Below are positions 15,907 to 46,729 of a DNA stretch of 64,000 nt, in pieces. Location of the stretch: NCBI GenBank assembly GCA_002269645.1, contig NIVC01000282.1:434001-498000 (forward strand), read 5' to 3'. The DNA comes from Macrostomum lignano (Eukaryota). Numbering within the stretch: position 1 is the first letter of the stretch; every line of letters starts with the position of its first letter. The notes below the pieces were generated by a model, which had not been told where the DNA came from, did no database searches, and was given only the letters and a program-made list of their open reading frames with translations. A program made the translations under genes and the position numbers.

Positions 15907-16114
15907 ATTTAGCAGTTACATGTTTTCATTGCTACTAGCAGTAGGTTAAAAATGTCTGACGAATGGAATTTCTGGCTGATTTAAACACGTATCAAATAAA
16001 TTAGTGTTCAATTGTGTCACTGCAATGATTCACGCTCGAGTTTTACAGTCCGGCTCACCGATTCTCCCTGCAAAATTCCTGTGAAATCACTATGCGAGTC
16101 ATTCTCTCTGCATT

Positions 16115-16495
16115 ACCTCTCTGTGTCACTCTGTCTGCGTCACTCCCTCTCTGTCACTCTACTCTGTCTGCGTCACTCCCTCTCTGTCACTCTACTCTGT
16201 CTGCGTCACTCCCTCTCTGTCACTCTACTCTGTCTGCGTCACTCCCTCTCTGTGTCACTCTGTCTGCGTCACTCCCTCTCTGTGTCACTCTGTCTGCGTC
16301 ACTCCGTCTCTGTGTCACTCTGTCTGCGTCACTCCCTCTCTGTGTCACTCTGTCTGCGTCACTCCCTCTTTGTGTCACTCTGTCTGCGTCACTCCCTCTC
16401 TGTGTCACTCTATCTGCGTCACTCCCTCTCTGTGTCACTCTGTCTGCGTCACTCCCTCTCTGAGTCACTCTGTCTGCGTCACCACCCTCTGTGAC
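16115..16495. repeat. 30-bp minisatellite GTCACTCCCTCTCTGTGTCACTCTGTCTGC between the converging ENaC and DLH 3' ends
   Basis: About 12 units. Confidence 0.93.
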
Positions 16496-16636
16496 TCTGT
16501 ATAAAAAAGCAACAGCAAAAAAGCTACGTACAAAATATTTCATAGAGTTCAAGCCTGTTTCAATGAAGAAGATTTTGTATATTGAAACAGTAAAAAACGA
16601 TGCAGTCTTAAAAATCATCTCTCGGCCCTCGCAGCC

Positions 16637-18269
16637 TCAGGCGTTGTCAATAAAAAACTTGGCCAGCGTGTCGCGAGCGTCCAGGATTTTCTCCATCTGC
16701 TTGGCGTCGTTGCGGTCGCCGCGGGCGGCACAGAATCCGTGCGAGACGCCGTCGTAGCGTCGGTGAACGCAGCGACTGTAGAACGGCTGGTCGCGCAGCT
16801 CCTCCAGCAGCTTCTGCATGTCCGGATCGTCACTGGCCGGCAGCAGGGCGATGGGCATCTGGGCAGGGCGGTTTTTATAAACTAAAGTTGCATGCAGCTG
16901 TGCGGAATTTCATTACTGCATGGTCATTTTTAGTTCGTAAATGCCAGCACCTTTCCTCCATCTGCCCGTCTCTCCTCCCTTCTCCCCTCTCCTCCATCTG
17001 CCCGTCTCTCCTCCTTTCTCCCCTCTCCTCCCTTCTCCCCTCTCCTCCATCTGCCCGTCTCTCCTCCCTTCTCCCCTCTCCTCCATCTGCCCGTCTCTCC
17101 TCCCTTCTCCTCTCTCCTCCCTTCTCCCCTCTCCTCCCTTCTCCCCTCTCCTCCCTTCTCCCCTCTCCTCCCTTCTCCCCTCTCCTCCCTTCTCCTCTCT
17201 CCTCCCTTCTCCCCTCTCCTCCCTTCTCCTCTCTCCTCCCTTCTCCCCTCTCCTCCATCTGCCCGTCTCTCCTCCCTTCTCCCCTCTCCTCCCTTCTCCC
17301 CTCTCCTCCCTTCTCCCCTCTCTCCTCCCTTCTCCCCTCTCCTCCCTTCTCCCCTCTCCTCCCTTCTCCCCTCTCCTCCCTTCTCCCCTCTCCTCCCTTC
17401 TCCCCTCTCCTCCCTTCTCTCCTCTCCCTCTCTCCTTCCTTCTCCCTTTCCCTCCACCTTCTCTGTTCCCCTCTCCCCAGCCACTCACCCGCACAGCCCT
17501 GACAAGGTCAGCCGTTAGAAAGGCCGGATGCGCGGAGGCGGCGCAGGCGAAAGGCGAACCGGCAGCGGCTGCCAGCAGCATGGCCGGCTTGGCGCCCCAG
17601 CAGAAGCCCAGCAGAGCCAGCTTGGCGCTCGGGTCGATTCGCTGCTTCAACAGCGGCACCGTCTGGTCCAGGATTGCCTTCGCGGCCTTGTCAGCGTTGG
17701 CCGTTGTTGACAGCCAGTTGCCGAATTCGGTCTTGTCAGGGGGCGGGAATCTGCGGCCGGATGGGGATTCCAGGTATCATTGTTGTGAGGCGTTGAGGTG
17801 AGATAAACAGGTGATTCTCAAGGTTGAACAGGTGATTCCCAAGGTTGAACAGGTGATTCCCAAGGTTGAACAGGTGATTCCTAAGGTTGAACATGTGATT
17901 CCCAAGGTTGAACAGGTGATTCCCAAGGTTGAACATGTGATTCCCAAGGTTGAACAGGTGATTCCCAAGGTTGAACAGGTGATTCCCAAGGCTCCCAAGA
18001 GCTCCGCACCTGGCCAAGCTCCAGGCCTCTCCGCCGTGGAACAGGTCCGGCATGACCACAGTGGCCTCGGCCTTAGCCGCCAGGTCATCGGCAAACTGGC
18101 GAGTCTGGCCAATGTCCAGCCCAAAGATGTCGTGAATGAGCACCAGACCGCGGCCTTTGCCGCTGCCAGTGATGTAGTTTCTCACTCCGCTGTCGGTGAC
18201 AATGGAGCCGGAGCCGCTGTTCGAGTTGTTGCTAGGGGAACCGCTGGAGCAGCAGACCTCGGTGGCCAT
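16637..18269 (-). CDS. Dienelactone hydrolase family (CMBL-like) alpha/beta hydrolase, about 247 aa
   Basis: Exons 18269-18010, 17750-17489, 16858-16637, phase-consistent. Motifs [15 protein letters not shown], nucleophile GFCWGA, PASDDP and HGFC (Cys-Asp-His triad). Confidence 0.9.
16950..17480. repeat. CT-rich degenerate tandem repeat in DLH intron 2
   Basis: (CTCCTCCCTTCTCCCCT)n-like polypyrimidine array. Confidence 0.9.
17800..17990. repeat. 21-bp minisatellite GGTGATTCCCAAGGTTGAACA in DLH intron 1
   Basis: About 9 units. Confidence 0.95.
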
Positions 18270-19024: not shown

Positions 19025-19830
19025 TAGGACGAGGGGCTGGTCAGGCTGAATGTACATTATCGGGAACGAGGGGTTGGTCAGGCTGAATGTACATTATCGG
19101 GGACGAGGGGTTGGTCAGGCTGAATGTACATTATCGGGGGCGAGGGGTCGGTCAGGCTGAATGTACATTATCGGGGACGAGGGGTTGGTCAGGCTGAATG
19201 TACATTATCGGGGGCGAGGGGTCGGTTAGGCTGAATGTACATTATCGGGAACGAGGGGTCGATTAGGCTGAATGTACATTATCGGGGACGAGGGGTTGGT
19301 CAGGCTGAATGTACATTATCGGGGACGAGGGGTCGGTTAGGCTGAATGTACATTATCGGGGACGAGGGGTTGGTCAGGCTGAATGTACATTATCGGGGAC
19401 GAGGGGTCGGTTAGGCTGAATGTACATTATCGGGGACGAGGGGTTGGTCAGGCGGGGTTGGTCAGGCTGAATGTACATTATCGGGGACTAGGGGTCGGTT
19501 AGGCTGAATGTACATTATCGGGGACGAGGGGTTGGTCAGGCGGGGTTGGTCAGGCTGAATGTACATTATCGGGGACTAGGGGTCGGTTAGGCTGAATGTA
19601 CATTATCGGGGACGAGGGGTTGGTCAGGCGGGGTTGGTCAGGCTGAATGTACATTATCGGGGACGAGGGGTCGGTTAGGCTGAATGTACATTATCGGGGA
19701 CGAGGGGTTGGTCAGGCGGGGTTGGTCAGGCTGAATGTACATTATCGGGGACGAGGGGTCGGTTAGGCTGAATGTACATTATCGGGGACGAGGGGTCGGT
19801 CAGGCTGAATGTACATTGTCGGGACGAGGC
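19025..19830. repeat. 37-bp minisatellite GGCTGAATGTACATTATCGGGGACGAGGGGTTGGTCA
   Basis: About 20 units between UQCC1 and DLH. Confidence 0.95.
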
Positions 19831-20035: not shown

Positions 20036-22632
20036 CTAGCTACCGCCCTGTTGCTGCCCAGCTCGCTGCACAGTGGACTGCGGCGCCAGAGCGTGCTTCA
20101 GCCGCTGCCTCATCCAGGCCTTGGTCTCGTCTCGGGACGGCTTCGGCACCAACGGCAGAAAGGTTGCTATGCCGTTGTCAACCAGATCGGAGTTGGGCAC
20201 GGTAGACAAATGGCGATAATTGGCTCTCACGTAGCGGACTAGCAGGTTCAGGCCTTCGGCGTCCACGTTGGGCGAGCCGTGGCAAACCTGGGGGGGGGGT
20301 GAGAGCGCAATAGGGAAGCCTTGGGTGCGAACTCAGCTACTGAATAAGACTCAGCTGCTGAATGAGACTCAGCTGCTGAATGAGACTCAGACACTCAATG
20401 AGAATCAACAGCTACTCAATGAGAATCAACAGCTACTCAATGAGAATCAACAGCTACTCAATGAGAATCAACAGCTACTCAATGAGAATCAACAGCTACT
20501 CAATGAGAATCAACAGCTACTCAATGAGAATCAACAGCTACTCAATGAGAATCAACAGCTACTCAATGAGAATCAACAAACTACTCAATGAGAATCAACA
20601 GCTACTCAATGAGAATCAACAGCTACTCAATGAGAATCAACAGCTACTCAATGAGAATCAACAGCTACTCAATGAGAATCAACAGCTACTCAATGAGAAT
20701 CAACAGCTACTCAATGAGAATCAACAGCTACTCAATGAGAATCAACAGCTACTCAATGAGAATCAACAGCTACTCAATGAGAATCAACAGCTACTCAATG
20801 AGAATCAACAAACTACTCAATGAGAATCAACAGCTACTCAATGAGAATCAACAGCTACTCAATGAGAATCAACAAACTACTCAATGAGAATCAACAGCTA
20901 CTCAATGAGAATCAACAGCTACTCAATGAGAATCAACAGCTACTCAATGAGAATCAACAGCTACTCAATGAGAATCAACAGCTACTCAATGAGAATCAAC
21001 AAACTACTCAATGAGAATCAACAAACTACTCAATGAGAATCAACAGCTACTCAATGAGAATCAACAGCTACTCAATGAGAATTAACAGCTACTCAATGAG
21101 AATCAACAGCTACTCAATGAGAATCAACAGCTACTCAATGAGAATCAACAGCTACTCAATGAGAATCAACAGCTACTCAATGAGAATCAACAAACTACTC
21201 AATGAGAATCAACAGCTACTCAATGAGAATCAACAGCTACTCAATGAGAATCAACAAACTACTCAATGAGAATCAACAAACTACTCAATGAGAATCAACA
21301 GCTACTCAATGAGAATCAACAAACTACTCAATGAGAATCAACAAACTACTCAATGAGAATCAACAGCTACTCAATGAGAATCAACAGCTACTCAATGAAA
21401 CCGAGCTCGCTAAAAGTCAGAGCACCCACCTGTTTCCACAGCACCTCAGCCAGAGCCATATCAGTATCTATATAGGCCAGTTTGTACAGAAAGTTGACAT
21501 GCTGAAACTGATTAAACAGCTGCCCGGCAGTTCGAATTTTCATAGACACGGTGGGGAAGTCGTGCAGTCGTTGGCGAATGTCTGCGTGAAACAGGCGGCC
21601 CATGCCGTAGAGCACATAGGTAGTGGGATAGTCGATATCAACCGAACCCTTGGACACGGTCTGCTCGCAGATTGCCCGAAGTCTTTGCATAACAAGCCAA
21701 AGGTGCAGCGAGGTGACGCCATGCCAGGTGGCAAACGAGTCGTCCAGGCCCAGTCTAGCAATCCACTCGCCGCTGTGATCGGGATACTCGGCGCAGACGC
21801 AGTACAAACTTTTGGCCACCTTCAAATATGGATCCCGACGCCAGCCTACAACACAGCGCAGATTGAGCAGCTGCTTCTTGACTAGCTGGGTGAATGGCAG
21901 CGCCTGGTAGACCTTCGTTTTGGGCTTGCTGGCCAGGCCGCGCCGGCAGCCAATCAGATAAGCCGGCGCCGCTGCCGCAGCCAATCTGGGCTGGAGGAAA
22001 ATCCTTGGCGCCGACAGCGGGTAAAAAAGCAATTTTCAATGTACATTGGGGTAAGAGAGTGAGCGGGAGACATTGTACATTCATGAAGTTGATTGTGGGA
22101 AGAGAATGTACATTGGGGTAAGAGAGTGAGCGGGAGACATTGTACATTCATGTCGAAGTTGGTGTTGTGGAGGGAATGTACATTGGGGTAAAAGAGTGAA
22201 CGGGAGACACGTAAAGTCATGAAGTTTGTTGTGGGGAGAATGTACATTGGGGTAAGAGAGTGAGCGGGAGACACTGTACATTCATGAAGTTGATTGTGGG
22301 GAGAGAATGTACATTGGGGTAAGAGAGTGAACGGGAGACACGTAAAGTCATGAATTTTGTTATGGGGAGAATGTACATTGGGGTAAGAGAGTGAGCGGGA
22401 GACACTGCACATTAAGGAGGTTGATATTTTGGAGAATGTACACTGGGATTGGGGTGAGTGAGCGGGAGACACTGTATATCAAGGAGGTTGGTATTTTGGA
22501 GAATGTACATTGGGATTGGGGTGAGTGAGCGGGAGACACTGTATATCAAGGAAGTTGGTTTTAAGATTTACCTATCAACTACTTATAAGCAAGAAGCAAG
22601 AAAAATCAAATAAAAAAATACGTAATTGCCAT
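20036..22632 (-). CDS. UQCC1: Ubiquinol-cytochrome c reductase complex assembly factor 1 (CBP3 homolog), about 278 aa
   Basis: Core exons about 22003-21430 and 20287-20036 (phase 0, CAG|GTGGGT..CCCCAG). LDDSFATWHGVTSLHLWLVMQRL, YIDTDMALAEVLWKQ and LNLLVRYVRANYRHL match CBP3/UQCC1. The start is uncertain: either an 11-nt exon ATGGCAATTAC at 22632-22622 (phase-compatible with the acceptor at 22004), or a spliced-leader-supplied AUG. Confidence 0.82.
20335..21400. repeat. 21-bp minisatellite ACTCAATGAGAATCAACAGCT in UQCC1 intron
   Basis: About 50 units. Confidence 0.96.
22038..22550. repeat. About 65-bp minisatellite (AATGTACATTGGGGTAAGAGAGTGAGCGGGAGACA...) 5' of the UQCC1 main exon
   Basis: About 8 diverging units. 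Confidence 0.9.
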
Positions 22633-22715
22633 CTAAGAACAAAAAGTTTCAGATACACGTAAAATAAGAAACTGAGCGCCTGCAGTGTCAGGCCAAGGAC
22701 AATGTGTACTTTATT
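22633..22715 (-). promoter_or_regulatory. AFG1L poly(A) signal followed by a U-rich putative trans-splice acceptor for UQCC1
   Basis: AATAAA at 22715-22710 (minus), then GTTTCTTATTTTACGTGTATCTGAAACTTTTTGTTCTTAG|ATG with AG at 22634-22633. Confidence 0.5.
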
Positions 22716-22871
22716 TAATCCATTATACACAAAGGCAAACAAGTGAAGCATTGAAGCACCCAGTTTTCGCATTCAACTTGATGACAGAAGAAAAAGTTTT
22801 TCACTGAGCTCAGAGGTAGCAAATCTAGAATCTAATTTAAAGAGGCTAACATTGCATCAATCTTGTATGCC

Positions 22872-25800
22872 TCAGATGATGGCATCTCTAGCTGACACAC
22901 TCCAGTACTGAGCTGACATCATCTCGGTCAGGCGGGACACAGTGCGCTCGTGAGCGAACACCTCCTCCTCGCCTGTGAAGATGGTCGCCCCCGCCGATTC
23001 AGCGTTGGGCCCGTGCTGAGACACGCCCAGATCGTCGCGAAGGACGCGCATCCGGTGCAGCTCGGCCTCGTCCAGCGAGTCGCCCGGCTGGAACAGGCTC
23101 TCGGGTGGCTCGGCCGCGCTTATTACTAGGCGGCACCTGGGGCAGCGGTGCGGGGTGATTGAGCGATTAAAGAATGCCTGGCCTATAGATAATTATCATA
23201 GCTATAACCGCCTGTAAGCAGTAAGCAAAGCGCCACACTATAAAAGCGCCAACATGTAATAAGCGCCAAAGTATAAAAGCGCCAAAATCTGCAAAGCGCC
23301 ACACAAAAAGAGCGCCAAAATCCACAAAACGACACACCACAAAAGCGCCAAAATCTACAAAGCGACACACCACAAAAGCGCCAAAATCTACAAAACGACA
23401 CACCACAAAAGCGCCAAAATCTACAAAGCGCCAAAGTATAAATGCGCCAAAATCTACAAAACGACACACCACAAAAGCGCCAAAATCTAAAAAGCGACAC
23501 ACCACAAAAGCGCCAAAATCTAAAAAGCGACACACCACAAAAGCGCCAAAATCTACAAAACGACACACCACAAAAGCGCCAAAATCTACAAAGCGCCAAA
23601 GTATAAATGCGCCAAAATCTACAAAACGACACACCACAAAAGCGCCAAAATCTAAAAAGCGACACACCACAAAAGCGCCAAAATCTAAAAAGCGACACAC
23701 CACAAAAGCGCCAAAATCTACAAAGCGACACACCACAAAAGCGCCAAAATCTACAAAACGACACACCACAAAAGCGCCAAAATCTACAAAACGACACACC
23801 ACAAAAGCGCCAAAATCTACAAAACGACACACCATAAAAGCGCCAAAATCTACTAAGTGCCAAAGTATAAATGCGCCAAAATCCACAAAACGACACACCA
23901 CAAATGCGCCAAAATCTACAAAACGACACACCACAAAAGCGCCAAAATCTACAAAACGACACACCACAAAAGCGCCAAAATCTACAAAACGACACACCAC
24001 AAAAGCGCCAAAATCTACTAAGTGCCAAAGTATAAATGCGCCAAAATCCACAAAACGACACACCACAAATGCGCCAAAATCTACAAAACGACACACCACA
24101 AAAGCGCCAAAATCTACAAAACGACACACCACAAAAGCGCCAAAATCTACAAAACGACACACCACAAAAGCGCCAAAATCTACAAAGTGAAACTAATCCT
24201 CACCTATTATCATAGATAGTATCTATCAGGGTAATAAACCTCCGCATAGCGCTCCGGTTCTGCAGCGACAGCACTGGAACGCCGTGCAGAAACAGGCAGT
24301 GGAAGCGCTGGCACACGGCCACATAGTCGGCGGCCGCCAGCGGCTGGCAGCACAGCTGATCAAAGCTCGCCCACAGCAGGCCGCCTTTGCACTTGTCAAA
24401 GCTGACGTCTCGGCCAAACACGCGCAGACGGGTCGGCCCGGCCGGGCCCGCCTCGGCCGAGCACAATCGCTTCCAAAGCGTCTCCATGGCAACGCTAGAA
24501 TCGGCATCGCCAGATAGAAAGTAGGTACGCATGGAGCCGCTAGAGCCAGCAGCAGCGTCTTTGTCCCGGGCCAGTCTGCGATAATCCACCCCGGAGCCGA
24601 GTTCCACAATGCCGCAGTGCCGCTTCAGAATGGGTATGAATGGCAGGAAGTTCACCCGCTGAAGCCCGTTCTTGTACAGGTCGTCCGGGGCCCGGTTGGA
24701 CGAGGCCACCAGCACCAGGCCGGAGGCGAACAGCACGGTGAACAGGCGTTTTAGAATCATCGCGTCGGCGATATCCGTCACTTGGAATTCGTCCAGGCAG
24801 AGCAGGCGGGTCCGGCTGGCGATGTCGGCAGCCACTGGCCCGATGGGGTCGTAGGCGCCCTGCGGTGCATGACGGGCTGCGGCTGTATCTCCCGTATAAA
24901 ACGAAACGGTCGCAAAAAGGGGCTGTGACCGTTCCCCTTGTTACCGTGGTCAGTAACGCTTGTGACCGTTTATTGTGACCGTTCATGTTCATGAAAATAA
25001 GGTCACATGTGACCGTTCATAGTTACCATATATGTGACCGTTTGTTCAGGGTCACATGTTACCGTTCAATGTGACCGTATTTTGTGACCGTTTGTTCAGG
25101 GTCACGTGTTACCGTTCAATGTTACCGTATTTTGTGACCGTTTGTCCAGGGTCACATGTTACCGTTCAATGTTACCGTATTTTGTGACCGTTTGTTCCGG
25201 GTCACGTGTTACCGTTCAATGTTACCGTATTTTGTGACCGTTTGTCCAGGGTCACATGTGACCGTTCAATGTTACCGTATTTTGTGACCGTTTGTTTAGG
25301 GTCACATGTGACCGTTCAATGTGACCGTATTTTGTGACCGTTTGTTTAGGGTCACATGTGACCGTTCAATGTTACCGTATTTTGTGACCGTTTGTTCAGG
25401 ATCACATGTTACCGATCAATGTGACCGTATTTTGTGACCGTTTGTTCAGGGTCACATGTGACCGTTCAATGTGACCGTATTTTGTGACCGTTTGTTCAGG
25501 GTCACGTGTTACCGTTTAATGTTACCGTATTTTGTGACCGTTTTGCTTAGGGTAACTATGTTACTGTTTACTGTTACCATATTTTGTGACCGTTTTGTGA
25601 TCTTGTGTGTTTTTTCTGACTATCGACCAACAGTATGTGCAAAATAATGTGCAAATAAGTAACAGGAATACAAATCAGCAGTAATATATTAGATGTGAAG
25701 TAACCAGTAATTGCGGCAATTAAGCTTTATATACGCAAAGCGCGCTATTATTAAAATGCATTATTATATGGTACATAGCGATCGCAGAAGTGCGCCAAAA

Positions 25801-28800
25801 AGAAGTAGTTGAATTAGTGGGACATCGCAGAAGTGCGCCAAAAAGAAGTAGTTGAATTAGTGGGACATCGCAGAAGTGCGCCAAAATGAACTAGTTGAAT
25901 TAGTGGGACATCGCAGAAGTGCACCAAAAAGAACTAGTTGAATTAGTGGGACATCGCAGAAGTGCGCGACCAAAAGTTTTAGAAACCCATTGTACTGCGA
26001 ATTTTAGGTTTAGTTTAGCTTTGTTTAGTTTAGCACAATGATATGTTGCATACACAAATTTCTCCCTCCCACTCTCTCCATTTTCTTTCATTATTCCCGA
26101 TAAGATCAGAAAAAGCCCAGTAAATAATAAAATGCCCGAAATGGCTGCATTTCAGTCTGGTACACTTCGACTCATGGATTTGCAGATGGATGAGAGGCTG
26201 CAGCTTCGTCGTCATTGTGATCTCCGTTGTCGCCAACGTTGGCGTCCTCATCATCGGCATCGATGTCGATCGTCGCCACCTCATTTCCGCTGGGTGCCAA
26301 TTTGAGCGATTTTTGTAGTTTTCGCGCAATACAGAATCCAGTGCGCTTAAACACGGCGGCATACTTTTGCTTTGCCGTACACTACGGCGACCGGCGGCCC
26401 GTTGGCGGACCGTTGCACCGCCTCGCCGGACTCCAGTACAGTTTGGACATATCGATCGCACATCATGCGCAGGCAGTTGGCCATTGCCTTTTGCGCCTCA
26501 GCGGGCGTGTCACCATGGCTGGCGCCTTTTGATCTTTGTTGCGCCAGGTACGCAATCATTGTCGTGATGACAATGCGGCAGCGGTGTATCTTGCTGGGCT
26601 CTTCGGCCCGTGCCGGTAGCTGCTTGGCCACTCGCTGCAGCACGTCGACCACCACAGCTTTTTCTGCAGCTTTGTCTGACGCCATGTCGATCCAGGCTGC
26701 TGGCCAGTTAAAGCCATTGGCGCACAGTGGTGCACACGATGGACAAACCGATGCCGCACTATTTGCTGCGCCGGATGGCGGCTTCGCGGGTGCACAGTCT
26801 GAGTCCACTGCACGTTCTGCGCCGGATGGCGGCTTCGCGGGTGCACAGTCCACTGCACGTTCTGCGCTGGATGGCGGCTTCGCGGGTGCACAGTCCACTG
26901 CACGTTCTGCGCCGGATGGCGGCTTCGCGGGTGCACAGTCCACTGCACGTTCTGCGCCGGATGGCAGCTGCGCAGGTGGCAGTTGCGCAATGGAAAATTT
27001 AATGGCCCGTTGAATATCATCGGGTGATCGGGCTGCCGAACTTGCTTCTGCGCCGGCTAGACCAGCTGATGGCACCGGGTGGTCCAATTGCAGCAATCGC
27101 TTGCTTATGTCACTAGCCTGCATAGCAACCAGGGCCAGTTCGCCATGCAGGCCATGGAAGCAATCTTGCAGGTCGCAGAGAGTCGCTTTGCGATCCGATT
27201 GTTGCAGCGGCAGCTCCTGCAGCATACAGATGACTGAACAGCTGCTATCAATATTTTTCAGAATATGTGTGACATTATCTTTTAATATGCTTGCAGACCG
27301 CATTATTCTATCTAGCGAGTCTGCATCCGCCATAGTAGAATTAGAGTTAATCTGGAATGGTTAATTGTAGGATAGCATAATTACAAGAACAAACAGTGGC
27401 GCAACCAGGGGGGGCGGGGGGGGGGGGCGGTCGCCCACCCCTTAGGCGGGGGACCAAAAAAAAATCAAAGGGGGGACCAAGCGAATTTTCGCCAAAAACA
27501 GAGCCACCCCTCCGCCGCCTCCCCCCCCCGGGACTTTAACCTCAGAACCCGCCCCCCCCCTTGAAAAATTTCTGGTTGCGTTACTGAGAACAAACACAAC
27601 CTAAGAAGTTAAGAAATTTGTCAGCTAATTTTTTGTACCAAAAGTTTTTTATGTGCAATATCTACCGGTGAAGAATAAATGAATGATAAAATGTTGTCTA
27701 ATTAGTACGTTGTCGTTATCAGGTGGCAGAAAGTCATTTTTGTAAAATTTTGGACATTTTTATAAGCAAAAGACATAATTAAGTTTCTGTACCTTTTAAA
27801 AACAAATAGAAAGCTTTGGAGGGTTGAAAAAAACTATAGATAAAAGTATAGTACTTGCATCATCAGATCTAATGCTATTATGATTTTATCTAGATAAAAA
27901 TACTGGTGACCAGAAAATCTGTTATCTATTTCATATATTGGTACTTCAAAGTTACAAAAAAAGTGTTATGACCATAAGGCTGCCTTTTATGTATCTTTGT
28001 TGCCTTTTTGAGTTTAATTATATATTGCAAAAGGAGTATGATTTCTGAAGATGTTCTTAGTCCAATTAAAAAAAATGCATTGCAAAATATTCTACATATA
28101 TTATATGTTTGAAAAATTTTATAAGACTTTAACTGTTTAGTTTCTATATGCCAAAAATCCTGTAATCCTGTTAGGCCTATTACAAACATAAGTGCCACTC
28201 AATGCTTAGGGCCTAATAGCATCTATATTAATAATGACATCTATATGAAAGTTTGGCAATCTTTAAGTTTCATTCATTAAATTATTTTTTCAATGATTTC
28301 TGAACTATCTTGCTCTGAGATGATTATTTTCGAGCTCTCCAGTGTACCCAGCCCTTTCCTAGCTGAGAAAGTAGCAGTTTTGTTAAGAAAGTTTATAAAC
28401 ATATTCTTGACAAAATTATATATCATTTAAAATATTGCTCCAGTATATTCTATTATTATATTTCATTTTATAAGTAAAAAAAGCAGTTATGCCTGTGCTT
28501 ATATGGAATGAGCCTAAAGATTTTGTATTCACATAGCCACAGACATGAGACAACTTAATCGACAGTTCACTGAAAACGTAACAGTAATCATTGTAGTAGC
28601 AAATTTGGCTCAGGCTTAAGGAGCCTGTTTTGCCAGTATAATTCGATGTATTTAGTGTTTGTTCAAAAGGTTAAATTTTTACAGTCGAAAACGAAAAAAA
28701 GATTTGAATCGGTGACTTGTCCGCCATATTGATTTTTAGTCCTGTTAACGACGTCGTGTTTTTTTTCACTACGCGTTTCTCACTTGTCGCACAATACTAA

Positions 28801-31800
28801 CCTTCTAATTCCGTAGTTGCGATTGTCATTTTAAGAGGTATAAGATGGTACCTACTTAAGAGAATCCTATCTTACTATCACTATAGCAGTATATTTCAGT
28901 GGATCGTATTTCTAGAAATAAATTTAACGCAGTGTATTCATTTTCCAGTGAAGCAGGTATAAACGTCATGTATTTCATGCAAATTTACAGACTGTAGCCA
29001 GCTGCCCATATTGATCAGAATATGAGATGAAGCCTTGAACAGAGCAATGTGAGTTAAACGATGGCGTACAGGGGGGCGACGGAGTCTAATATTTTTGGGG
29101 GGCACCAGGCACAGGGCAAGGGGGGCACAGGTACCTTCATAATTACTGCTAATTAGTGCCTAAAATCAGAGGAAGCACTAAAAATTACCGCCTGGACTTA
29201 TTTTCTGGGGGGAGGCACGTGCCCCCTGTGCCGCAAGCTCCCGCCGCCCATGATGGCGTATGTTTCAGACAGTTGGCATCATTAAAGCACAGTTATGCGC
29301 GATAATAGATTAATGCATTATAAATGTAGCCAATTGGCTAAATGTACTACTGCTAACAAATATATACTACTACGCCAAAAGAAACTAAGCGACTATCCGC
29401 CATAAGTCAATGTCCCTATGCTGCGAAGGAAAATTGTTCATGTGGCAGAAACGCCACGTGAGAGTCCGACACGGCACAAGATTTGACGATGGTGGCAACC
29501 GGGTCCAATTCGAAGTAGAACTTGGACACCTCGTCGAAAGGGCTTCGTCGCAATCGACGCACGTGCGCAAGCGCACAACCGCCAAGTAGGCGACGCCCAG
29601 AGAAGCAGTAAAGTGGATTATCGCGTGGCTCCAAGTACTTCTCGGTCAATAAACGACGAACAACCAATTTTGCAGTGCCATCTGCAACGCGAATCGACTC
29701 CACTCGACCGAACTCAAATAATGTCGCGCCGCAATTAAATGCGATGAAGCAGGACGCAGATCTGCAGAATTGCAACTCAGGTCGAAAAACCTCCAGCTGG
29801 CATCCACTGTGAAGTACAGCCCTCGTGAAGCCACGTCCCTGTCGGCGCTCGTACAGCCGCACTCCACCGGCGGTTGTCAATGCCGGTCTATCTGTCGCCT
29901 TTGGGTTGGAGCTATTGAAAATGTCTCTGACACCCAATAGTGAGCTGAGATAACGAGTCGCCGCACGTCGAGTTAGCTGCTTTACCAACTGTTTGTCTGA
30001 GTGTCGCGTACCGTGAACTCGCGAGCGCAAGCGACCATGCATAGACTCGAAAAGTCCGGCTGATACCCGATGCAGCGGTCCTAGCAGTAGAGCATACGCA
30101 CTAAAATGCTCACATACCTGGTGAGCATTATACGTCTGTGCGGCTGCTCCGAAAAGGTTGCGCAGCTCTTTATAAAAGTGCTTCAGGTTAGCGTCAGCTC
30201 GCAATATCTGCGTGTGCGGTGCGCCATCGAGACAAAGCCAGAAAATAGCAGACGACAGAAGCATAAAGTGCTGGTAGTAACTGGCATCAAGCAGGCCATC
30301 CCCTAGCACCATTGGTCCGTAACAAAGTAGCCACGCTTCGAGCTCGTGCCCACGGAAGTGCCCTAGCTCATGCATCGTGCGCGGGGCCCGCTGATGCGAC
30401 GCCGGCACGTGGATAGTCGCCAGCCTAGTGTTAATATCTGAAAGTCGTCTGGACAAATCCGGTGCGGGACACACTCTCATGGGCTTCTTGCCAATTGGCA
30501 CAAATAACTGCTCCATAGTGCGTCGGACAAGACCAGTCAGCAATTGATGCAGGAAACATGGTGGACAACCTTGAATGTAGTCAAAGCCCTCAAGCCGATA
30601 AAGTGGCGATACCGCTATGACTCCCAGGTTGTGCTCCGCTGATACCGGTTTAGTGTTTGCCAGCATCACGGTGTCAGCCAGATTGCGAACTGTTGGCTGC
30701 GTGACATTGGCAGCCAGAGCTGCATGCATCGCATCATCCGACATTGCGCATGGATATATTCTCGCACTGCCCCCACGTTCTGCGTCGTGCAGGGAGATAG
30801 TGTAGCAATTGTCGCACCCGTACTCGGCATTAAACTGACGCATGCATTTGGTTTCTGCCCGTTGCGGAGCGTCTAGAATAAACATTAGTGGGTGCAGTCT
30901 AATTCTTCCACCCTGTTTGCCATCGACACCGGCACCTTTCATGAATTCAATACCAACTGACCGCAGTGCATTCAGTTGCTCTACTAGCCAAGGGAGATAC
31001 GCAGTGGAGCGTAGTTTCCTTTTAGCGGACCAGAAGCCGGCTACAACGACATATCTACTCTTCATGTTGTCGGTTACTTCGTTAATGCTGACATAAACTG
31101 GACACATTTCCATAACAGACCTTTTAAAAATTGGAAAGCCATCGATGCACACTGAATACGTGAGGTCACTTCGTGAGCCCAGTGCAATAGACCGCTTGAA
31201 TGCCGCATACGCAGTTCCGCTACCCATGTAAAGACGTCCCACGTTCGCCGGCTGATCGACGGGATATATTACGTGGTCTAGAAGATGGCATTCTTCGATC
31301 ATCTGTCGTACTTGGCTGCCTATATCCATTCGCCAGAAGTGCCCAACAGACTCTGGCGATTCCAATCTAGCATTACAATGCGGACAGTGATTTGGGCGCG
31401 GTTGTTGCATCTCGCGATCGCAGCTCAGACAATACACTGAAGGTCTGCATCTCGTGTAGGAGTACGGTGTCAGGTTTAGCAAATTGTCCAGCATATGACG
31501 GGTCTGTGGAAACGCAGCATTTACAGGAAGCACGGCCTTTGTGTAGGCAAGCAATTTGTCGACACCATGTACAGAAAGATTTTGCGCAAAGGCCAGACAC
31601 TGAGCTAGGGTTCCAATTGCAGCGTATGACACAGTAGCGCCAGGATAGGCGACCAACTGGCAAAAGTTACGCAGTTTAGCGTCGTCTGAATCATAATCAT
31701 CGCCGTCACCGTCATCGCTGTATTCGGCATCGTCGCTAGGCGCTTGGCTGGCAGAGCTTTCGGTAGCTTCGCTGGCATCGCCGGCTTCACTAGCAGTTTC

Positions 31801-34800
31801 GCTGGCAGAGCTTTCGGTAGCTTCGCTGGCATCGCCGGCTTCACTGGCAGTTTCGCTGGCAGAGCTTTCGGTAGCTTCACTGGCATCGCCGGCTTCACTG
31901 GCAGTTTCGCTGGCAGAGCTTTCGGCAGCTTCGCTGGCATCGCCGGCTTCACTGGCAGTTTCGCTGGTGGAGGCTTCGCCGGTAGATGGCGGTTGTGAAG
32001 TAGCTTCGCCGGTAGATGGCGGTTGTGAAGTAGCTTCGCCGGTAGATGGCGGTTGTGAAGTAGCTTCGCCGGTAGATGGCGGTTGTGAAGTAGCTTCGCC
32101 GGTAGATGGCGGTTGTGGAGTACCTTCGCTACCGATGTCGTCGTCTGGATGACGGCGCTTATTACCACGATTCGTCTGTGGATTTCCAATGGCGGCGCCC
32201 ATTGCAGTCGTTCCAGATTGTAACCACTGTTGTCGCCTTTGAAATAGAAGCTGCACTGTCTTGCGTTCTCGAAATCGTTTCACTCTTAAACGAGTCATAA
32301 TGGCGCGGCGTTGCTGGGCTTCCATGATAGAGATTTTTGTTCTTAATAATGATTCTTATCCTCTGCAAAAGTGGCAAACGTTCATGAGAAATTAGTCAGT
32401 TGCTTCGTGGGTTACCGTCACTTCTCCTTATATACTGATTTGAAAGAGAACGGATCCCTGGGCATAGGTAATAAATTTGCTTCCCTATTCATAACTATCA
32501 CGTGTCCATACCTAACTATATATAACTGGGTATCCATGTGACCTATTTCAGGAGAGGCTACTCTGTAAAATTGTAAAGTAAAAATTCAGGCAACAATAAC
32601 ACGTGCGTCACGCCGCACTCAAATTTAGCAACGTAGTAGCAGTCTATTATGCAATGAAGACGACAACAGTTGGTAGAAAGCGACAAGTAGTAAACTCCAC
32701 AACAGAACAAAACGGTCACAAAATACGGTAACAGTGAACGGTAACATGTGACCCTGAACAAACGGTCACAAAATACGGTCACATTGATCGGTAACACGTG
32801 ACCCTGAACAAACGGTCACAAAATACGGTCACATTGATCGGTAACGTGTGACCCTAAACAAAACGGTCACAAAATACGGTCACATTGATCGGTAACATGT
32901 GACCCTAAACAAAACGGTCACAAAATACGGTCACATTGAACGGTAACGTGTGACCCTAAACAAAACGGTCACAAAATACGGTCACATTGATCGGTAACAT
33001 GTGACCCTAAACAAAACGGTCACAAAATACGGTCACATTGATCGGTAACATGTGACCCTAAACAAAACGGTCAAAAAATACGGTCACATTGATCGGTAAC
33101 ATGTGACCCTAAACAAAACGGTCAAAAAATACGGTCACATTGATCGGTAACATGTGACCCTAAACAAAACGGTCACAAAATACGGTCACATTGATCGGTA
33201 ACATGTGACCCTAAACAAAACGGTCACAAAATACGGTCACATTGATCGGTAACATGTGACCCTAAACAAAACGGTCACAAAATACGGTCACATTGATCGG
33301 TAACATGTGACCCTAAACAAAACGGTCACAAAATACGGTAACTATGAACAGTCACATGGTTACCCTAAGCAAACCGGTCACAAAATACGGTCACATTGAT
33401 CGGTAACATGTGACCCTAAACAAAACGGTCACAAAATACGGTAACTATGAACAGTCACATGGTTACCCTAAGCAAACCGGTCACAAAATACGGTCACATT
33501 GATCGGTAACATGTGACCCTAAACAAAACGGTCACAAAATACGGTCACATTGATCGGTAACATGTGACCCTAAACAAAATGGTCACAAAGTACGGTAACA
33601 TTGAACAGTCACATGGTGACCCTGAACTAAACAGTCACAAATACGGTAAAAAATGGTAACTGGTGACCGTAACGGTAAAAAACACGGTAACAGCCCCTTT
33701 TTGTGACCGTTTCGTTTTATACGGGTCTGGTAGTACGAGTCGTCACCCAACAACGGCTCATATTGTAGGACCCTGGGGAACCAGCGGCCCATATTGTAGG
33801 ACCCTGGGGAACCAGCGGCCCATATTGTAGGACCCTGGGGAACCAGCGGCCCATATTGTAGGACCCTGGGGAACCAGCGGCCCATATTGTAGGACCCTGG
33901 GGAACCAGCGGCCCATATTGTAGGACCCTGGGGAACCAGCGGCCCATATTTTAGGACCCTGGGGAACCAGCGGCCCATATTGTAGGACCCTGGGGAACCA
34001 GCGGCCCATATTGTAGGACCCTGGGGAACCAGCGGCCTATATTGTAGGACCCTGGGGAACCAGCGGCCCATATTTTAGGACCCTGGGGAACCAGCGGCCC
34101 ATATTGTAGGACCCTGGAGAACCAGCGGCCAAACCAATCAAAGACCCTAGGGAGCCAGCGGCCCAACCCAAGGAAGGATTCTGGAGCACAGCGACCCAAC
34201 CAAATGAAGGACCTTGGAGCACAGCGACCCAACCCAATAGAGGACCCTGGAGCACAGCGGCCCAACCCAATAGAGGACCCTGGAGCACAGTGGCCCAACC
34301 CAATAGAGGACCCTGGAGCACAGCGGCCCAACCCAATGAAGGACCCTGGAGCACAGCGGCCCAACCCAATGAAGGTCAGTTAGGAACCAGCAGTGGAAAG
34401 AAGCCAGGTCCTTTTAACCAAAAAATGTCAGCAATTTGTCACCTTAACAGACTTGTCCGCCTGCTTGAACCGATGAATCATCTGGTGCACCTCGGTCATG
34501 AATGCGTGGAAATGCAATCTACGCTTGGCAAGCACGGCAGAGCTTGGCTCGCCACCAGAACCTGAACAGCAGTTGAAAAACAAGTCCATTAGCATGCTTT
34601 TGCCGCCGCCAACGCCGCCATAAATATAGAGGCCGCGTGGACCAGCCAAACTTGGCTGCGGAGCTGACTTGGCTGTCCATCGCTGCATCAGCCGCGACAT
34701 CAAGCCGGCAGATCCGGCAGCTGCTGAAGATGCTGCTGCTGACGGTGCAGTCAGCAGATGACCGCCGGTCAGTAGTTCCGCATGCAGACGGTCCAGCTGT

Positions 34801-34973
34801 TCAAGCACCATCAGCTGATGCGAGTCCTGGCGCAGGTGGCCCTTGGCAACAAGACTGGCATAGACTGCTGTAGGCGCCGATTCATTACTAGCAGTAGTAG
34901 ATGAACAGAATCGAATGAAAGCAGTGTTGCAGACTCTGCTTCTGCGACAAATGTGGCCAATCAAACCTGGCAT
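22872..34973 (-). CDS. AFG1L: AFG1-like mitochondrial AAA+ ATPase (LACE1), about 483 aa
   Basis: Exons 34973-34443, 24859-24204, 23136-22872. Walker [19 protein letters not shown]; [12 protein letters not shown]; [51 protein letters not shown]; C-terminal [21 protein letters not shown]. Intron 1 (about 9.6 kb) contains the transposon. Confidence 0.93.
23230..24185. repeat. 33-bp minisatellite AAAAGCGCCAAAATCTACAAAACGACACACCAC in AFG1L intron 2
   Basis: About 28 units with variant units interspersed. Confidence 0.96.
24920..25600. repeat. Left subterminal repeat array of the transposon (about 52-bp units, GT(G/T)ACCG motifs)
   Basis: (GTGACCGTTCAATGTTACCGTATTTTGTGACCGTTTGTTCAGGGTCACAT)n, the reverse complement of the right array. 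Confidence 0.92.
25785..25965. repeat. About 42-bp tandem repeat inside the transposon
   Basis: CGCAGAAGTGCGCCAAAAAGAAGTAGTTGAATTAGTGGGACAT x4. Confidence 0.9.
26172..27333 (-). CDS. Transposon accessory ORF2 (unknown function), probably split by a 1-nt frameshift near 26355
   Basis: ATG-initiated 328-aa GC-rich ORF (27333-26347) with an internal ([15 protein letters not shown])x4 repeat. An overlapping frame continues [36 protein letters not shown] to 26172. Same strand as the transposase, between the TIRs. Confidence 0.6.
27394..27586. mobile_element. hAT-like MITE (193 bp) nested in the CACTA element
   Basis: TIR CAGTGGCGCAACCAG / CTGGTTGCGTTACTG; exact 8-bp TSD AGAACAAA (27386-27393; 27587-27594). 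Confidence 0.88.
27620..28450. mobile_element. AT-rich dispersed repeat, copy A (inverted homolog at about 37130-37820)
   Basis: For example GTACCTTTTAAAAACAAATAGAAAGCTTT and TATAGTACTTGCATCATCAGAT are present as reverse complements at about 37540-37630; the homology is colinear over about 700 bp. Confidence 0.8.
29069..29252. mobile_element. hAT-like MITE (184 bp) nested in the CACTA element
   Basis: Imperfect TIR CAGGGGGGCGACGGAG / CTCCCGCCGCCCATG; exact 8-bp TSD ATGGCGTA (29061-29068; 29253-29260). Confidence 0.8.
29416..32325 (-). CDS. CACTA/EnSpm-like (CMC, Transposase_21/DUF4218-type) DDE transposase, 969 aa, uninterrupted
   Basis: Zn-finger CLSC..CPHC; first catalytic block [25 protein letters not shown]; second [25 protein letters not shown]; [13 protein letters not shown]; [16 protein letters not shown]; [10 protein letters not shown]; [16 protein letters not shown]. 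Lies between TIRs. Confidence 0.9.
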   Translation of the reverse strand: MEAQQRRAIMTRLRVKRFRERKTVQLLFQRRQQWLQSGTTAMGAAIGNPQTNRGNKRRHPDDDIGSEGTPQPPSTGEATSQPPSTGEATSQPPSTGEATSQPPSTGEATSQPPSTGEASTSETASEAGDASEAAESSASETASEAGDASEATESSASETASEAGDASEATESSASETASEAGDASEATESSASQAPSDDAEYSDDGDGDDYDSDDAKLRNFCQLVAYPGATVSYAAIGTLAQCLAFAQNLSVHGVDKLLAYTKAVLPVNAAFPQTRHMLDNLLNLTPYSYTRCRPSVYCLSCDREMQQPRPNHCPHCNARLESPESVGHFWRMDIGSQVRQMIEECHLLDHVIYPVDQPANVGRLYMGSGTAYAAFKRSIALGSRSDLTYSVCIDGFPIFKRSVMEMCPVYVSINEVTDNMKSRYVVVAGFWSAKRKLRSTAYLPWLVEQLNALRSVGIEFMKGAGVDGKQGGRIRLHPLMFILDAPQRAETKCMRQFNAEYGCDNCYTISLHDAERGGSARIYPCAMSDDAMHAALAANVTQPTVRNLADTVMLANTKPVSAEHNLGVIAVSPLYRLEGFDYIQGCPPCFLHQLLTGLVRRTMEQLFVPIGKKPMRVCPAPDLSRRLSDINTRLATIHVPASHQRAPRTMHELGHFRGHELEAWLLCYGPMVLGDGLLDASYYQHFMLLSSAIFWLCLDGAPHTQILRADANLKHFYKELRNLFGAAAQTYNAHQVCEHFSAYALLLGPLHRVSAGLFESMHGRLRSRVHGTRHSDKQLVKQLTRRAATRYLSSLLGVRDIFNSSNPKATDRPALTTAGGVRLYERRQGRGFTRAVLHSGCQLEVFRPELQFCRSASCFIAFNCGATLFEFGRVESIRVADGTAKLVVRRLLTEKYLEPRDNPLYCFSGRRLLGGCALAHVRRLRRSPFDEVSKFYFELDPVATIVKSCAVSDSHVAFLPHEQFSFAA
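32710..33700. repeat. Right subterminal repeat array of the transposon
   Basis: (CGGTCACAAAATACGGTCACATTGATCGGTAACATGTGACCCTAAACAAAA)n, about 17 units. Confidence 0.93.
33745..34380. repeat. 32/33-bp minisatellite in AFG1L intron 1 (two related unit types)
   Basis: GGAACCAGCGGCCCATATTGTAGGACCCTGGG x about 11, then CAGCGGCCCAACCCAATAGAGGACCCTGGAGCA x about 7. Confidence 0.94.
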
Positions 34974-35685
34974 AGCAATTCTGCTTGCAAAAATATTTCG
35001 GGTAGTTTGAAGCCATGAATTTATAATATTTTATAGGAATTCTAAAGGATTAAACGTGCCAAAAAAGTAATATCTCAGTGATAAATATTTTTATGGCTCA
35101 ATTTTCTATGGCTTCTATGGCTCAGATTTTATTACATGTATTCAAGGCAAGCCAATGCACAATCACTGAGATGCTATACTTACTAGAGTTCTGATTAGTC
35201 CAAATTAGTTCCCAACCTCCATGACCAAGAATATCCAAGATTTGCTAGACTCTATATGAGTGCATATGATGTGCATTAGTACTAACCTGTGTATAAATGC
35301 TCTTAGAATGACACAAATATTTTAGGCACTAACATGTATTTTATAGCTAAATAAAAAAGAAACATGGATTCTCATCTTTTTATCATTTAAAACACAACAA
35401 ACATTTTACTAGATATTAAAACACAAACACAAAATTTTACTTATTATCATAATAGGGCCTAATATTTTATTTTAGAATACACTTTATACTATTATAAAAG
35501 CCTTGCTTTGCCATAACTATTGTCTAAAAAACTAAAATAGGAAAGATATAAAAGTCAAGTTTTATTTATAATAAAAATATTGTAGTGACTTTTATTATAT
35601 AATTTTAATATTGCAAAAAGTAATAATAGTAATAGTAATAATAATAATAATAATAATAATCGATTACAAGTATCCTAAATGGGTC

Positions 35686-46581: not shown

Positions 46582-46729
46582 GAGGAAGGCGGAACCGTTG
46601 AAGCCCTCGCCTGCGTCTGCTTGCTGTTAGACTGAATTCTGCTGGGTTGGCGGCAGGCTGTTCGGGGCTGAAGAAAAAGGCAGGTGAGACGCACTGTATG
46701 GTTATACTAATGTAGCCTCTTTTAATGAC

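What the first reader, a model, noticed from the sequence alone, without database searches (positions are those of the whole stretch)
20036..23136. Probable trans-spliced operon linking two mitochondrial respiratory-chain assembly factors (AFG1L -> UQCC1)
Seen: AFG1L stop at 22872, AATAAA at 22715-22710, then about 75 nt ending in a U-rich tract and TTTTTGTTCTTAG|ATG (22632), on the same strand with no room for an obvious promoter. The UQCC1 main exon has no in-frame Met before the conserved domain. It needs either this 11-nt exon or an AUG supplied by a spliced leader at CTCCAG|CCC (21990; in frame, giving MPRLAAAAAPAYLIGCRRGLASK, a plausible targeting peptide). Established: flatworms use SL trans-splicing with an SL ending in AUG; nematode-type operons have short U-rich intercistronic regions; AFG1L acts in cytochrome c oxidase subunit turnover and UQCC1/CBP3 in cytochrome b assembly. 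Inference: a functionally coherent polycistronic unit.
Basis: partly seen in the sequence, partly recalled or inferred. Interest (0 to 1): 0.7.

Follow-up and report, generated by a model that had tools for sequence, protein, structure and literature searches.

The report
Flatworm two-gene operon, AFG1L then UQCC1
This is a stretch of the flatworm Macrostomum lignano genome where two mitochondrial housekeeping genes sit head-to-tail and are very probably made as one transcript, cut apart by spliced-leader trans-splicing that also gives the second gene its start codon; this is an ordinary arrangement in this animal and is already reflected in its public annotation.

Summary
The window is Macrostomum lignano, assembly Mlig_3_7, contig NIVC01000282.1.

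UQCC1 (PF03981) has no genomic start codon. An in-frame stop lies 16 codons upstream of the acceptor, and the first Met is codon 101, inside the domain. The published M. lignano spliced leader ends in ATG. CAG|CCC is the only in-frame acceptor, it fits the published SL-acceptor motif, and no consensus donor lies upstream of it. The SL AUG is therefore the likely initiator.

In two of three homeologous copies, GenBank locus tags put AFG1L and UQCC1 in one RNA-seq-derived transcriptional unit (g1/g2). The spacer is 202 nt of unique sequence plus a 259-1935 nt minisatellite, which fits the published operon criterion.

The 11-nt mini-exon is rejected. It is out of frame at 21990, its donor is poor, its ATG is ATT in the third copy, and it is in no gene model.

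The gene pair is not adjacent in the one schistosome or the one nematode checked. About 15% of M. lignano genes lie in such operons, so this is ordinary. I saw no SL reads or TSS data directly.

The parts
35019..35035 (-). TATA-like motifs (TATAAAA at 35035-35029, TATAAAT at 35025-35019), 7-23 nt upstream of the annotated AFG1L 5' end. This is the candidate promoter of the whole unit.
   Evidence: No called gene lies within 4.6-6 kb upstream in the two other copies. The promoter function is inferred.
34443..35012 (-). AFG1L exon 1. The annotated 5' end is 35012 and the ATG is at 34973. It encodes the presequence and the Walker A motif GGVGGGKS. The donor is GTTAAG|GTGACA.
   Evidence: The exact 496-aa product is NCBI PAA86405.1, BOX15_Mlig001086g4.
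24204..24859 (-). AFG1L exon 2 (Walker B motif [11 protein letters not shown]). Acceptor CCGCAG|GGCGCC, donor TAATAG|GTGAGG.
22872..23136 (-). AFG1L exon 3, ending in the stop TGA at 22874-22872.
22710..22715 (-). AFG1L poly(A) signal AATAAA, 156 nt after the stop. It is identical in position in all three copies.
22622..22632 (-). Rejected: it most likely belongs to the U-rich region downstream of the AFG1L cleavage site.
   Evidence: It is out of frame at 21990. Its donor GTATTT does not match GT[G/A]AG. The ATG reads ATT in copy L003. It is absent from all annotated gene models.
22038..22557 (-). A 67-bp minisatellite (7.8 copies) carrying the palindrome AATGTACATT. It fills most of the intercistronic region.
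   Evidence: Its span is 259, 517 and 1935 nt in the three copies, while the unique spacer stays at 202 nt.
21991..22000 (-). Proposed SL trans-splice acceptor TTTCCTCCAG|. CTCCAG fits the published motif [T/C]TNCAG.
   Evidence: The 18 nt upstream of the exon (CCAAGGATTTTCCTCCAG) are identical in all three copies. It is the only in-frame AG in the window and in copy L001. There is no GT[A/G]AG donor in the 881 nt upstream. Use by the SL is inferred, not observed.
21430..21990 (-). UQCC1 exon A (187 codons, no ATG before codon 101). Donor AAACAG|GTGGGT.
   Evidence: The spliced product equals NCBI PAA86404.1 (BOX15_Mlig004120g1, 'partial') from PRL onward.
20288..21429 (-). UQCC1 intron, almost entirely a 21-bp tandem repeat (47 copies, 20393-21398).
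   Evidence: The intron length is 858, 1142 and 1351 nt in the three copies.
20036..20287 (-). UQCC1 exon B, ending in the stop TAG at 20038-20036.

Best explanation
This is a two-gene transcription unit of Macrostomum lignano, resolved by spliced-leader trans-splicing.

Proposed mechanism:
1. Transcription starts at a TATA-type promoter upstream of AFG1L (about 35012) and runs through AFG1L, which has 3 exons.
2. The AFG1L mRNA is cleaved and polyadenylated just after AATAAA (22715-22710).
3. The polymerase continues across about 700 nt of spacer: 202 nt of unique sequence plus a minisatellite.
4. The 35-nt SL (...TTGCATG) is trans-spliced onto the unpaired acceptor TTTCCTCCAG|CCC at 21990.
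5. The terminal AUG of the SL becomes the UQCC1 initiator. The product is a 271-aa protein, MPRLAAAAAPAYLIGCRRGLASK..., with a mitochondrial presequence.

Shown here: the gene models, the absence of any genomic start codon, the in-frame acceptor, the lack of an upstream donor, conservation of these features in three copies, and membership of one annotated transcriptional unit in two copies.

Inferred, not shown: actual SL addition at 21990, and the absence of an internal promoter.
For: Organism and contig:
- The window is M. lignano, contig NIVC01000282.1.

SL and operon criteria from the literature:
- The SL sequence ends in ATG. The published SL-acceptor motif is [T/C]TNCAG.
- About 30% of genes are trans-spliced and about 15% lie in operons.
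- Repeat-adjusted intergenic distances peak near 100 bp, and the published operon cut-off is 1 kb (PMC8629364).

UQCC1 has no genomic start codon:
- An in-frame stop lies 16 codons upstream of the acceptor. There is no ATG until codon 101, and the domain starts at residue 80.
- Two independent annotations, NCBI and UniProt/ML2, both give start-less 'partial' proteins for every copy.

The acceptor:
- CAG|CCC is the only in-frame AG in the window. The other AGs give SL-AUG ORFs of only 6 to 83 codons.
- No GT[A/G]AG donor occurs anywhere between the AFG1L stop and the acceptor.

The predicted N-terminus:
- It has 9 K/R residues and no acidic residue in its first 53 residues.

One transcriptional unit:
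- The locus tags are Mlig029659g1/g2 and Mlig001086g1/g2 for AFG1L/UQCC1.

The spacer:
- The unique part is 202 nt in all three copies despite a 7-fold difference in repeat length.

Precedent:
- The SL AUG is an established initiator in flatworms (Cheng et al. 2006, as cited in PMC9851317).
Against: - I had no SL-containing read, poly(A)-end (T-fill) read or transcription-start (RAMPAGE) signal for this locus. The SL+exon junction was not found in the only searchable read-derived collection, and the exact SL-AUG protein is not in the protein collection.
- In the window's own copy the two genes belong to different annotated units, Mlig001086g4 and Mlig004120g1.
- The annotated UQCC1 CDS starts 12 nt (window, L001) or 18 nt (L003) upstream of CAG|CCC, not at it. 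In two copies this would fit the AAG|G acceptor at -13, which is out of frame.
- 202 nt of unique spacer plus the repeats could hold an internal promoter. A weak TATAAG sits at 22587-22582.
- According to PMC8629364, about 60% of trans-spliced M. lignano genes are not in operons.
Confidence: 0.7

Rival explanations
1. UQCC1 is SL trans-spliced at 21990 and uses the SL AUG, but it is mainly transcribed from its own promoter inside the spacer. It would then be a monocistronic trans-spliced gene, or a 'hybrid' operon with an internal promoter. The shared transcriptional unit would be read-through noise.
For: - 881 nt separate the AFG1L stop from the acceptor.
- A TATAAG lies at 22587-22582.
- The window copy was annotated as two separate units.
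- Most trans-spliced M. lignano genes are not in operons.
- The annotated 5' ends lie a few nt upstream of the acceptor.
Against: - Two of three copies were assembled as a single unit, even across 1.9 kb of repeats in L001.
- The TATAAG is TATAAC in L003, and the unique spacer is no better conserved than the 3' UTR: 87-90% against 94%.
- The repeat-adjusted distance of about 200 nt falls in the published operon mode.
Confidence: 0.22
2. A cis-spliced 5' micro-exon supplies the start codon. It would be the reader's ATGGCAATTAC at 22632-22622, possibly itself SL-spliced at 22633.
For: - The acceptor TTTTTGTTCTTAG lies 77 nt after AATAAA and is conserved in all three copies.
- The 11-nt exon is in frame if joined to the secondary acceptor CCCAG|ATTGG at 21985, giving MAITLAAAAA (my reading).
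Against: - It is out of frame with the strong acceptor at 21990.
- Its donor GTATTT does not fit GT[G/A]AG.
- Two substitutions fall within the 11 nt in L003 and destroy the ATG, whereas true exon sequence differs by only 2%.
- No RNA-seq-based gene model uses it. If one did, the CDS would have been called complete.
- An 11-nt exon is below the usual size for exon definition (general knowledge).
Confidence: 0.03
3. There is no SL-supplied start. UQCC1 would be translated from a non-AUG codon upstream of the acceptor, or from Met101, or the three copies are decaying pseudogenes.
For: - The frame stays open for 15 codons upstream of the acceptor, with TTG and CTG codons.
- The annotated CDSs include 4-6 of those codons.
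Against: - All three copies keep intact ORFs, with dN/dS about 0.3-0.4.
- Starting at Met101 would remove the presequence and the start of the domain.
- The upstream CTG is CAG in L003.
- Use of the SL AUG is an established flatworm mechanism.
Confidence: 0.05

Closest known systems
SL-resolved operons of Macrostomum lignano (Wudarski et al. 2017, PMC5730564; Ustyantsev & Berezikov 2021, PMC8629364)
   Same: - Same organism.
- Same-strand neighbours, with the upstream gene apparently not trans-spliced. By the paper's count, 18% of genes assigned to operons are in operons that start with such a gene.
- The downstream gene sits behind a [T/C]TNCAG acceptor.
- The spacer is inflated by repeats but short once they are subtracted (202 nt).
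- The two genes share one transcriptional-unit prefix in the GenBank annotation.
   Different: Nothing in kind. In the window's copy the pipeline split the unit in two. No paper I could search mentions these gene IDs.
Flatworm SL 3'-terminal AUG used as initiator methionine (Cheng, Cohen, Ndegwa & Davis 2006, J Biol Chem 281:733; summarised in PMC9851317)
   Same: The SL ends in AUG, the acceptor is in frame with an ORF that has no genomic start codon, and the encoded protein needs that AUG.
   Different: That work was demonstrated in Schistosoma mansoni. Here the case is inferred from sequence for M. lignano UQCC1. The public CDS records simply flag the protein as 5'-partial.
Caenorhabditis elegans operons (Blumenthal & Gleason 2003)
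   Same: A polycistronic pre-mRNA, 3'-end formation of the upstream gene coupled to trans-splicing of the downstream gene, and a tendency to hold housekeeping and mitochondrial genes (my own knowledge).
   Different: M. lignano has a single SL, with no SL2-type specialisation. Here the spacer is hundreds to thousands of nt because of minisatellites. The nematode SLs do not end in AUG.
Schistosoma mansoni UbCRBP-enolase polycistron (Davis & Hodgson 1997; see PMC12582326)
   Same: A flatworm dicistronic unit that includes a respiratory complex III-related gene (my own knowledge for the UbCRBP identity).
   Different: The gene pair is different. That operon is conserved across trematodes, whereas the AFG1L-UQCC1 adjacency was not seen in the one schistosome or the one nematode checked.

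Membership tests
SL trans-spliced operon (polycistronic transcription unit) | Two or more genes on the same strand with a short intergenic distance (M. lignano criterion: under 1 kb after subtracting repeats). | tested here: met
   Same strand. From AATAAA to the acceptor is 719 nt, of which 517 nt are minisatellite and 202 nt are unique, in all three copies. The criterion comes from PMC8629364.
SL trans-spliced operon (polycistronic transcription unit) | One primary transcript spans both genes. | tested here: met
   The evidence is indirect. AFG1L and UQCC1 share a transcriptional-unit prefix in two of three copies: Mlig029659g1/g2 and Mlig001086g1/g2. The naming rule is documented. This is not so in the window's own copy. 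I did not see the reads.
SL trans-spliced operon (polycistronic transcription unit) | The downstream gene receives the SL at its 5' acceptor. | not testable with these tools
   No RNA reads were available. Indirect support: a motif-matching in-frame acceptor, no upstream donor, and no genomic AUG. The junction search found nothing.
SL trans-spliced operon (polycistronic transcription unit) | No independent promoter or TSS between the genes. | not testable with these tools
   This needs RAMPAGE/CAGE data. Only a weak, non-conserved TATAAG was seen at 22587-22582.
SL trans-spliced operon (polycistronic transcription unit) | A 3'-end formation signal for the upstream gene lies inside the unit. 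| tested here: met
   AATAAA lies 156 nt after the stop, with a conserved U-rich downstream region in three copies.
SL-donated initiator AUG (slORF) | The species' SL ends in AUG. | tested here: met
   The SL is CGGTCTCTTACTGCGAAGACTCAATTTATTGCATG (PMC8629364). This is from the literature. No SL gene lies in the window.
SL-donated initiator AUG (slORF) | The acceptor is in frame with the main ORF, and no in-frame genomic AUG is available for a full-length protein. | tested here: met
   There is a stop at -16 codons and the first Met is codon 101. The same holds in three copies.
SL-donated initiator AUG (slORF) | Translation actually initiates at the SL AUG. | not testable with these tools
   This needs ribosome profiling or an N-terminal peptide.
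UQCC1 / Cbp3 (Ubiq_cyt_C_chap, PF03981) | A significant match to the family profile over its full length. | tested here: met
   E=2.1e-16, 60.7 bits (cut-off 21.5), profile positions 2-138 of 140.
AFG1L / LACE1 (AFG1_ATPase, PF03969) | A significant match to the family profile, plus Walker A and Walker B motifs. | tested here: met
   E=1.6e-86. Motifs GGVGGGKS and LLCLDEF are present. Identity to animal AFG1-like/N2B ATPases is about 50%.
Evolutionarily conserved, functionally selected operon | The same gene pair is adjacent in other SL-using lineages. | tested here: not met
   The downstream neighbour of AFG1L is an opposite-strand GTPase in Schistosoma turkestanicum. In Aphelenchoides besseyi it is a Zc3h12a-type RNase. 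Only two species were checked, and other Macrostomum genomes were not available.

The most novel reading that the evidence does not exclude
The pairing would not be a chance product of operon formation. It would be a selected co-expression module that couples cytochrome b/complex III assembly (UQCC1) to AFG1L-dependent quality control of respiratory-chain subunits. The related AATGTACATT-palindrome minisatellites that bracket UQCC1 on both sides, in all three copies, would play a role in processing or insulating the polycistronic transcript, or would mark how UQCC1 was inserted behind AFG1L.
Probability: 0.06. Interest if true: 0.45.

Novelty: already known. Interest (0 to 1): 0.18.

Why it matters
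It matters little beyond annotation hygiene. It gives a concrete, checkable case in which three GenBank records and two UniProt records for M. lignano UQCC1 are labelled 'partial'. The real reason is that the start codon comes from the spliced leader, so the true protein is probably 271 aa and begins MPRL. It also illustrates the published point that M. lignano operon spacers are inflated by minisatellites: here the spacer varies 7-fold between copies while the unique part is fixed at 202 nt. The functional pairing of two OXPHOS-biogenesis factors is a reasonable talking point. However, about 10,000 M. lignano genes lie in operons, and by my own rough estimate dozens of mitochondrial-mitochondrial pairs are expected by chance, given that trans-spliced and operon genes are enriched for conserved genes.

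Tried and rejected
1. The 11-nt mini-exon as the source of the AUG. Rejected on frame, donor quality, non-conservation and absence from gene models.
2. Any other cis first exon in the spacer. There are 41 formal ATG...|GT phase-0 combinations, and none has a GT[A/G]AG donor.
3. Direct transcript evidence. The exact SL-AUG protein is not in the 15-billion-protein collection, only annotation-derived proteins cluster with UQCC1, and the SL+exon junction is not in metagenome contigs.
4. Per-gene trans-splicing flags in paper supplements. Nothing is held for these gene IDs.
5. An SL RNA gene or any Rfam family in the window. None was found.
6. Extension to a three-gene operon with the downstream DLH/CMBL-like gene. 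That gene belongs to a different transcriptional-unit cluster (Mlig020230) and has its own ATG, so it is not included.
7. Conserved synteny. Not found in the two species checked.
8. An explanation for the annotated 5' ends at -12 and -18 nt. I considered the AAG|G acceptor at -13, which fits two copies but not L003 and is out of frame. I also considered forced end-to-end alignment of reads carrying partial SL. Neither could be tested.

Full report
**What the window is.** The spliced UQCC1 product from the window is 100% identical to M. lignano proteins. These are UniRef A0A1I8H8N5 and NCBI PAA86404.1, BOX15_Mlig004120g1, labelled 'partial'. Fetching the contig that encodes it returned NIVC01000282.1 of assembly GCA_002269645.1 (Mlig_3_7). 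That contig is the window itself in reverse orientation: locus L002 position p equals window position 32003-p. Both genes lie on the minus strand.

**Checking the observation.**
- The AFG1L stop TGA is at 22874-22872.
- AATAAA is at 22715-22710.
- TTTTTGTTCTTAG|ATG has its ATG at 22632.
- TTTCCTCCAG|CCC has the exon starting at 21990.

Putting ATG in front of 21990 gives MPRLAAAAAPAYLIGCRRGLASK, as stated.

**Gene models.**
- UQCC1 has exon A at 21990-21430, an intron that is almost entirely a 21-bp tandem repeat, and exon B at 20287-20036. The product matches PF03981 at E=2e-16.
- AFG1L has exons at 35012/ATG 34973-34443, 24859-24204 and 23136-22872. The product matches PF03969 at E=1.6e-86 and is exactly NCBI PAA86405.1.

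**The start-codon problem is real.** In the UQCC1 frame a TGA lies 16 codons upstream of the acceptor, with no ATG between them. The first Met is codon 101, and the Pfam domain begins at residue 80. All three NCBI copies and both UniProt entries are start-less 'partial' proteins that read a few codons through the acceptor.

**The mini-exon fails.**
- ATGGCAATTAC joined at 21990 is out of frame and stops after 15 codons. It is in frame only with the weaker next AG at 21985.
- Its donor GTATTT does not fit the M. lignano donor motif GT[G/A]AG.
- In the third genomic copy the ATG reads ATT. That is two changes in 11 nt, against 2% divergence in real exon sequence.
- No RNA-seq-based model uses it.

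**Why the SL AUG at 21990 is the best reading.**
- The published M. lignano SL is CGGTCTCTTACTGCGAAGACTCAATTTATTGCATG, and the enriched SL-acceptor motif is [T/C]TNCAG (PMC8629364). CTCCAG fits that motif.
- Among all AGs between the upstream stop and +60 nt, only CAG|CCC is in frame in the window and in L001. L003 has one extra in-frame site at -24. The other AGs give SL-AUG ORFs of 6 to 83 codons.
- No GT[A/G]AG donor exists in the 881 nt between the AFG1L stop and this acceptor. The acceptor is therefore unpaired. According to the work cited in PMC8629364 (Conrad et al. 1993), that condition suffices for SL trans-splicing.
- The predicted N-terminus has nine K/R residues and no acidic residue in its first 53 residues, which is typical of a mitochondrial presequence.
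- Use of the flatworm SL AUG as initiator is established. It is in frame in 28% of S. mansoni trans-spliced mRNAs and is required by more than 40 cDNAs (Cheng et al. 2006, as summarised in PMC9851317).

**Is it an operon?** Mlig_3_7 holds three homeologous copies: L001, L002 (the window) and L003. Exact look-ups give these locus tags:

| Copy | AFG1L | UQCC1 | DLH |
|---|---|---|---|
| L001 | Mlig029659g1 | Mlig029659g2 | not looked up |
| L003 | Mlig001086g1 | Mlig001086g2 | Mlig020230g1 |
| window (L002) | Mlig001086g4 | Mlig004120g1 | Mlig020230g2 |

- The authors state that assembled transcripts were called transcriptional units. Their TBONE pipeline cut these units into genes at SL and poly(A) signals.
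- Their Supplementary Fig. [quoted passage not shown]
- Two unrelated genes can share a prefix only if one assembled transcript contained both. Co-transcription was therefore already recorded for two of the three copies. One of them, L001, has a spacer with 1.9 kb of repeats.
- The distance from AATAAA to the acceptor is 462, 719 and 2137 nt in the three copies. All of the difference is copy number of a 67-bp minisatellite, and the unique part is 202-203 nt in each. That falls well inside the published repeat-adjusted operon threshold of 1 kb, and near its roughly 100-bp mode.
- AFG1L itself has TATAAAA/TATAAAT just upstream of its annotated 5' end and its own ATG. No gene is called for 4.6-6 kb upstream in the two other copies. 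It looks like the promoter-proximal, non-trans-spliced first gene.

**What remains open.**
- I could not see SL, T-fill or RAMPAGE reads.
- The window's copy was annotated as two separate units.
- The annotated UQCC1 CDS begins 12 nt (window, L001) or 18 nt (L003) upstream of CAG|CCC, which I cannot explain. An AAG|G acceptor at -13 would fit two copies but is out of frame.
- An internal promoter in the 202-nt unique spacer cannot be excluded. For this reason I give the full mechanism 0.7. I put the SL-AUG step alone at about 0.85.

**Functional coherence and conservation.**
- By homology, both products are mitochondrial OXPHOS-biogenesis factors. From general knowledge, AFG1L/Afg1 acts in turnover of complex IV subunits, and UQCC1/Cbp3 acts in cytochrome b assembly.
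- The downstream neighbour of AFG1L is unrelated in Schistosoma turkestanicum and in Aphelenchoides besseyi.
- All three M. lignano copies keep intact ORFs, with dN/dS about 0.3-0.4 from very few substitutions.
- About 10,458 genes lie in operons, and trans-spliced and operon genes are enriched for conserved genes. A mitochondrial-mitochondrial pair is therefore not surprising.

**Verdict.** This is a correct reading of an ordinary M. lignano operon. The operon is already implicit in the public annotation. The only small addition is that the 'partial' UQCC1 CDS is probably complete once the SL AUG is counted.

Noticed in passing
window ~24891-33725 (minus-strand AFG1L intron 1): An insertion of about 8.8 kb is present only in this copy: intron 1 is 9583 nt here, against 855 nt in L001 and about 1040 nt in L003. 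It is bounded by inverted arrays of a ~50-bp tandem repeat (25001-25595 and 32706-33647, arms up to 155 nt at 94-95% complementarity). It carries an intact 969-aa ORF (29416-32325, minus strand) with no Pfam family, and a 328-aa ORF (26347-27333, minus strand). It looks like a recently inserted, possibly autonomous DNA transposon of an undescribed type. It is not annotated as a gene in GenBank.
   Followed up: partly
window 22038-22557 and 19027-19829: The 10-bp palindrome AATGTACATT occurs 28 times in the window, against 0.07 expected. 27 of these lie in two related minisatellites (67-bp and 37-bp units) that bracket UQCC1 upstream and downstream. Both arrays are present in all three genomic copies, with different copy numbers. 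Their meaning is unknown: shared satellite ancestry, a footprint of how UQCC1 arrived here, or a binding site.
   Followed up: partly
window 22002-21991; L003 9995-10018: The annotated UQCC1 CDSs start 12 nt (window, L001) or 18 nt (L003) upstream of the CAG|CCC acceptor, not at it. An AAG|G acceptor at -13 would fit two copies but gives an out-of-frame 83-codon SL-AUG ORF. L003 has an extra in-frame acceptor, CAG|TCG, at -24, where the window has CTG. This is unexplained and may be an artefact of how 5' ends were assembled.
   Followed up: partly
window 16637-18269 (minus strand): A dienelactone-hydrolase (CMBL-like, PF01738) gene lies on the same strand, 1.77 kb downstream of UQCC1. It has 3 exons and 247 aa, with its own ATG (NCBI PAA86403.1, Mlig020230g2). 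About 1.07 kb of the gap is minisatellite. It is annotated as a separate transcriptional unit. By the distance criterion alone it could be a third operon member if it is trans-spliced.
   Followed up: partly
window 20393-21398, 23226-24187, 16970-17445, 17806-17991: The introns of all three genes consist almost entirely of minisatellites. These are 21-bp x47 in UQCC1, 33-bp x29 in AFG1L intron 2, and a 17-bp CT-rich array and a 21-bp array in the DLH gene. For UQCC1, the intron length differs between homeologous copies (858, 1142 and 1351 nt).
   Followed up: no
L003 12183-12185: In the most divergent copy the UQCC1 stop is shifted by one codon, so the protein ends ...GGSY. That copy also carries 8-9 amino-acid changes. 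It is still an intact ORF.
   Followed up: no
window 46001-48000 and 16001-18000: These stretches have extreme strand asymmetry: GC skew -0.51 with AT skew -0.48, and GC skew -0.33 with AT skew -0.33. In 16001-18000 the skew coincides with C/T-rich tandem arrays (16116-16500, 16970-17445). 46001-48000 was not examined.
   Followed up: no
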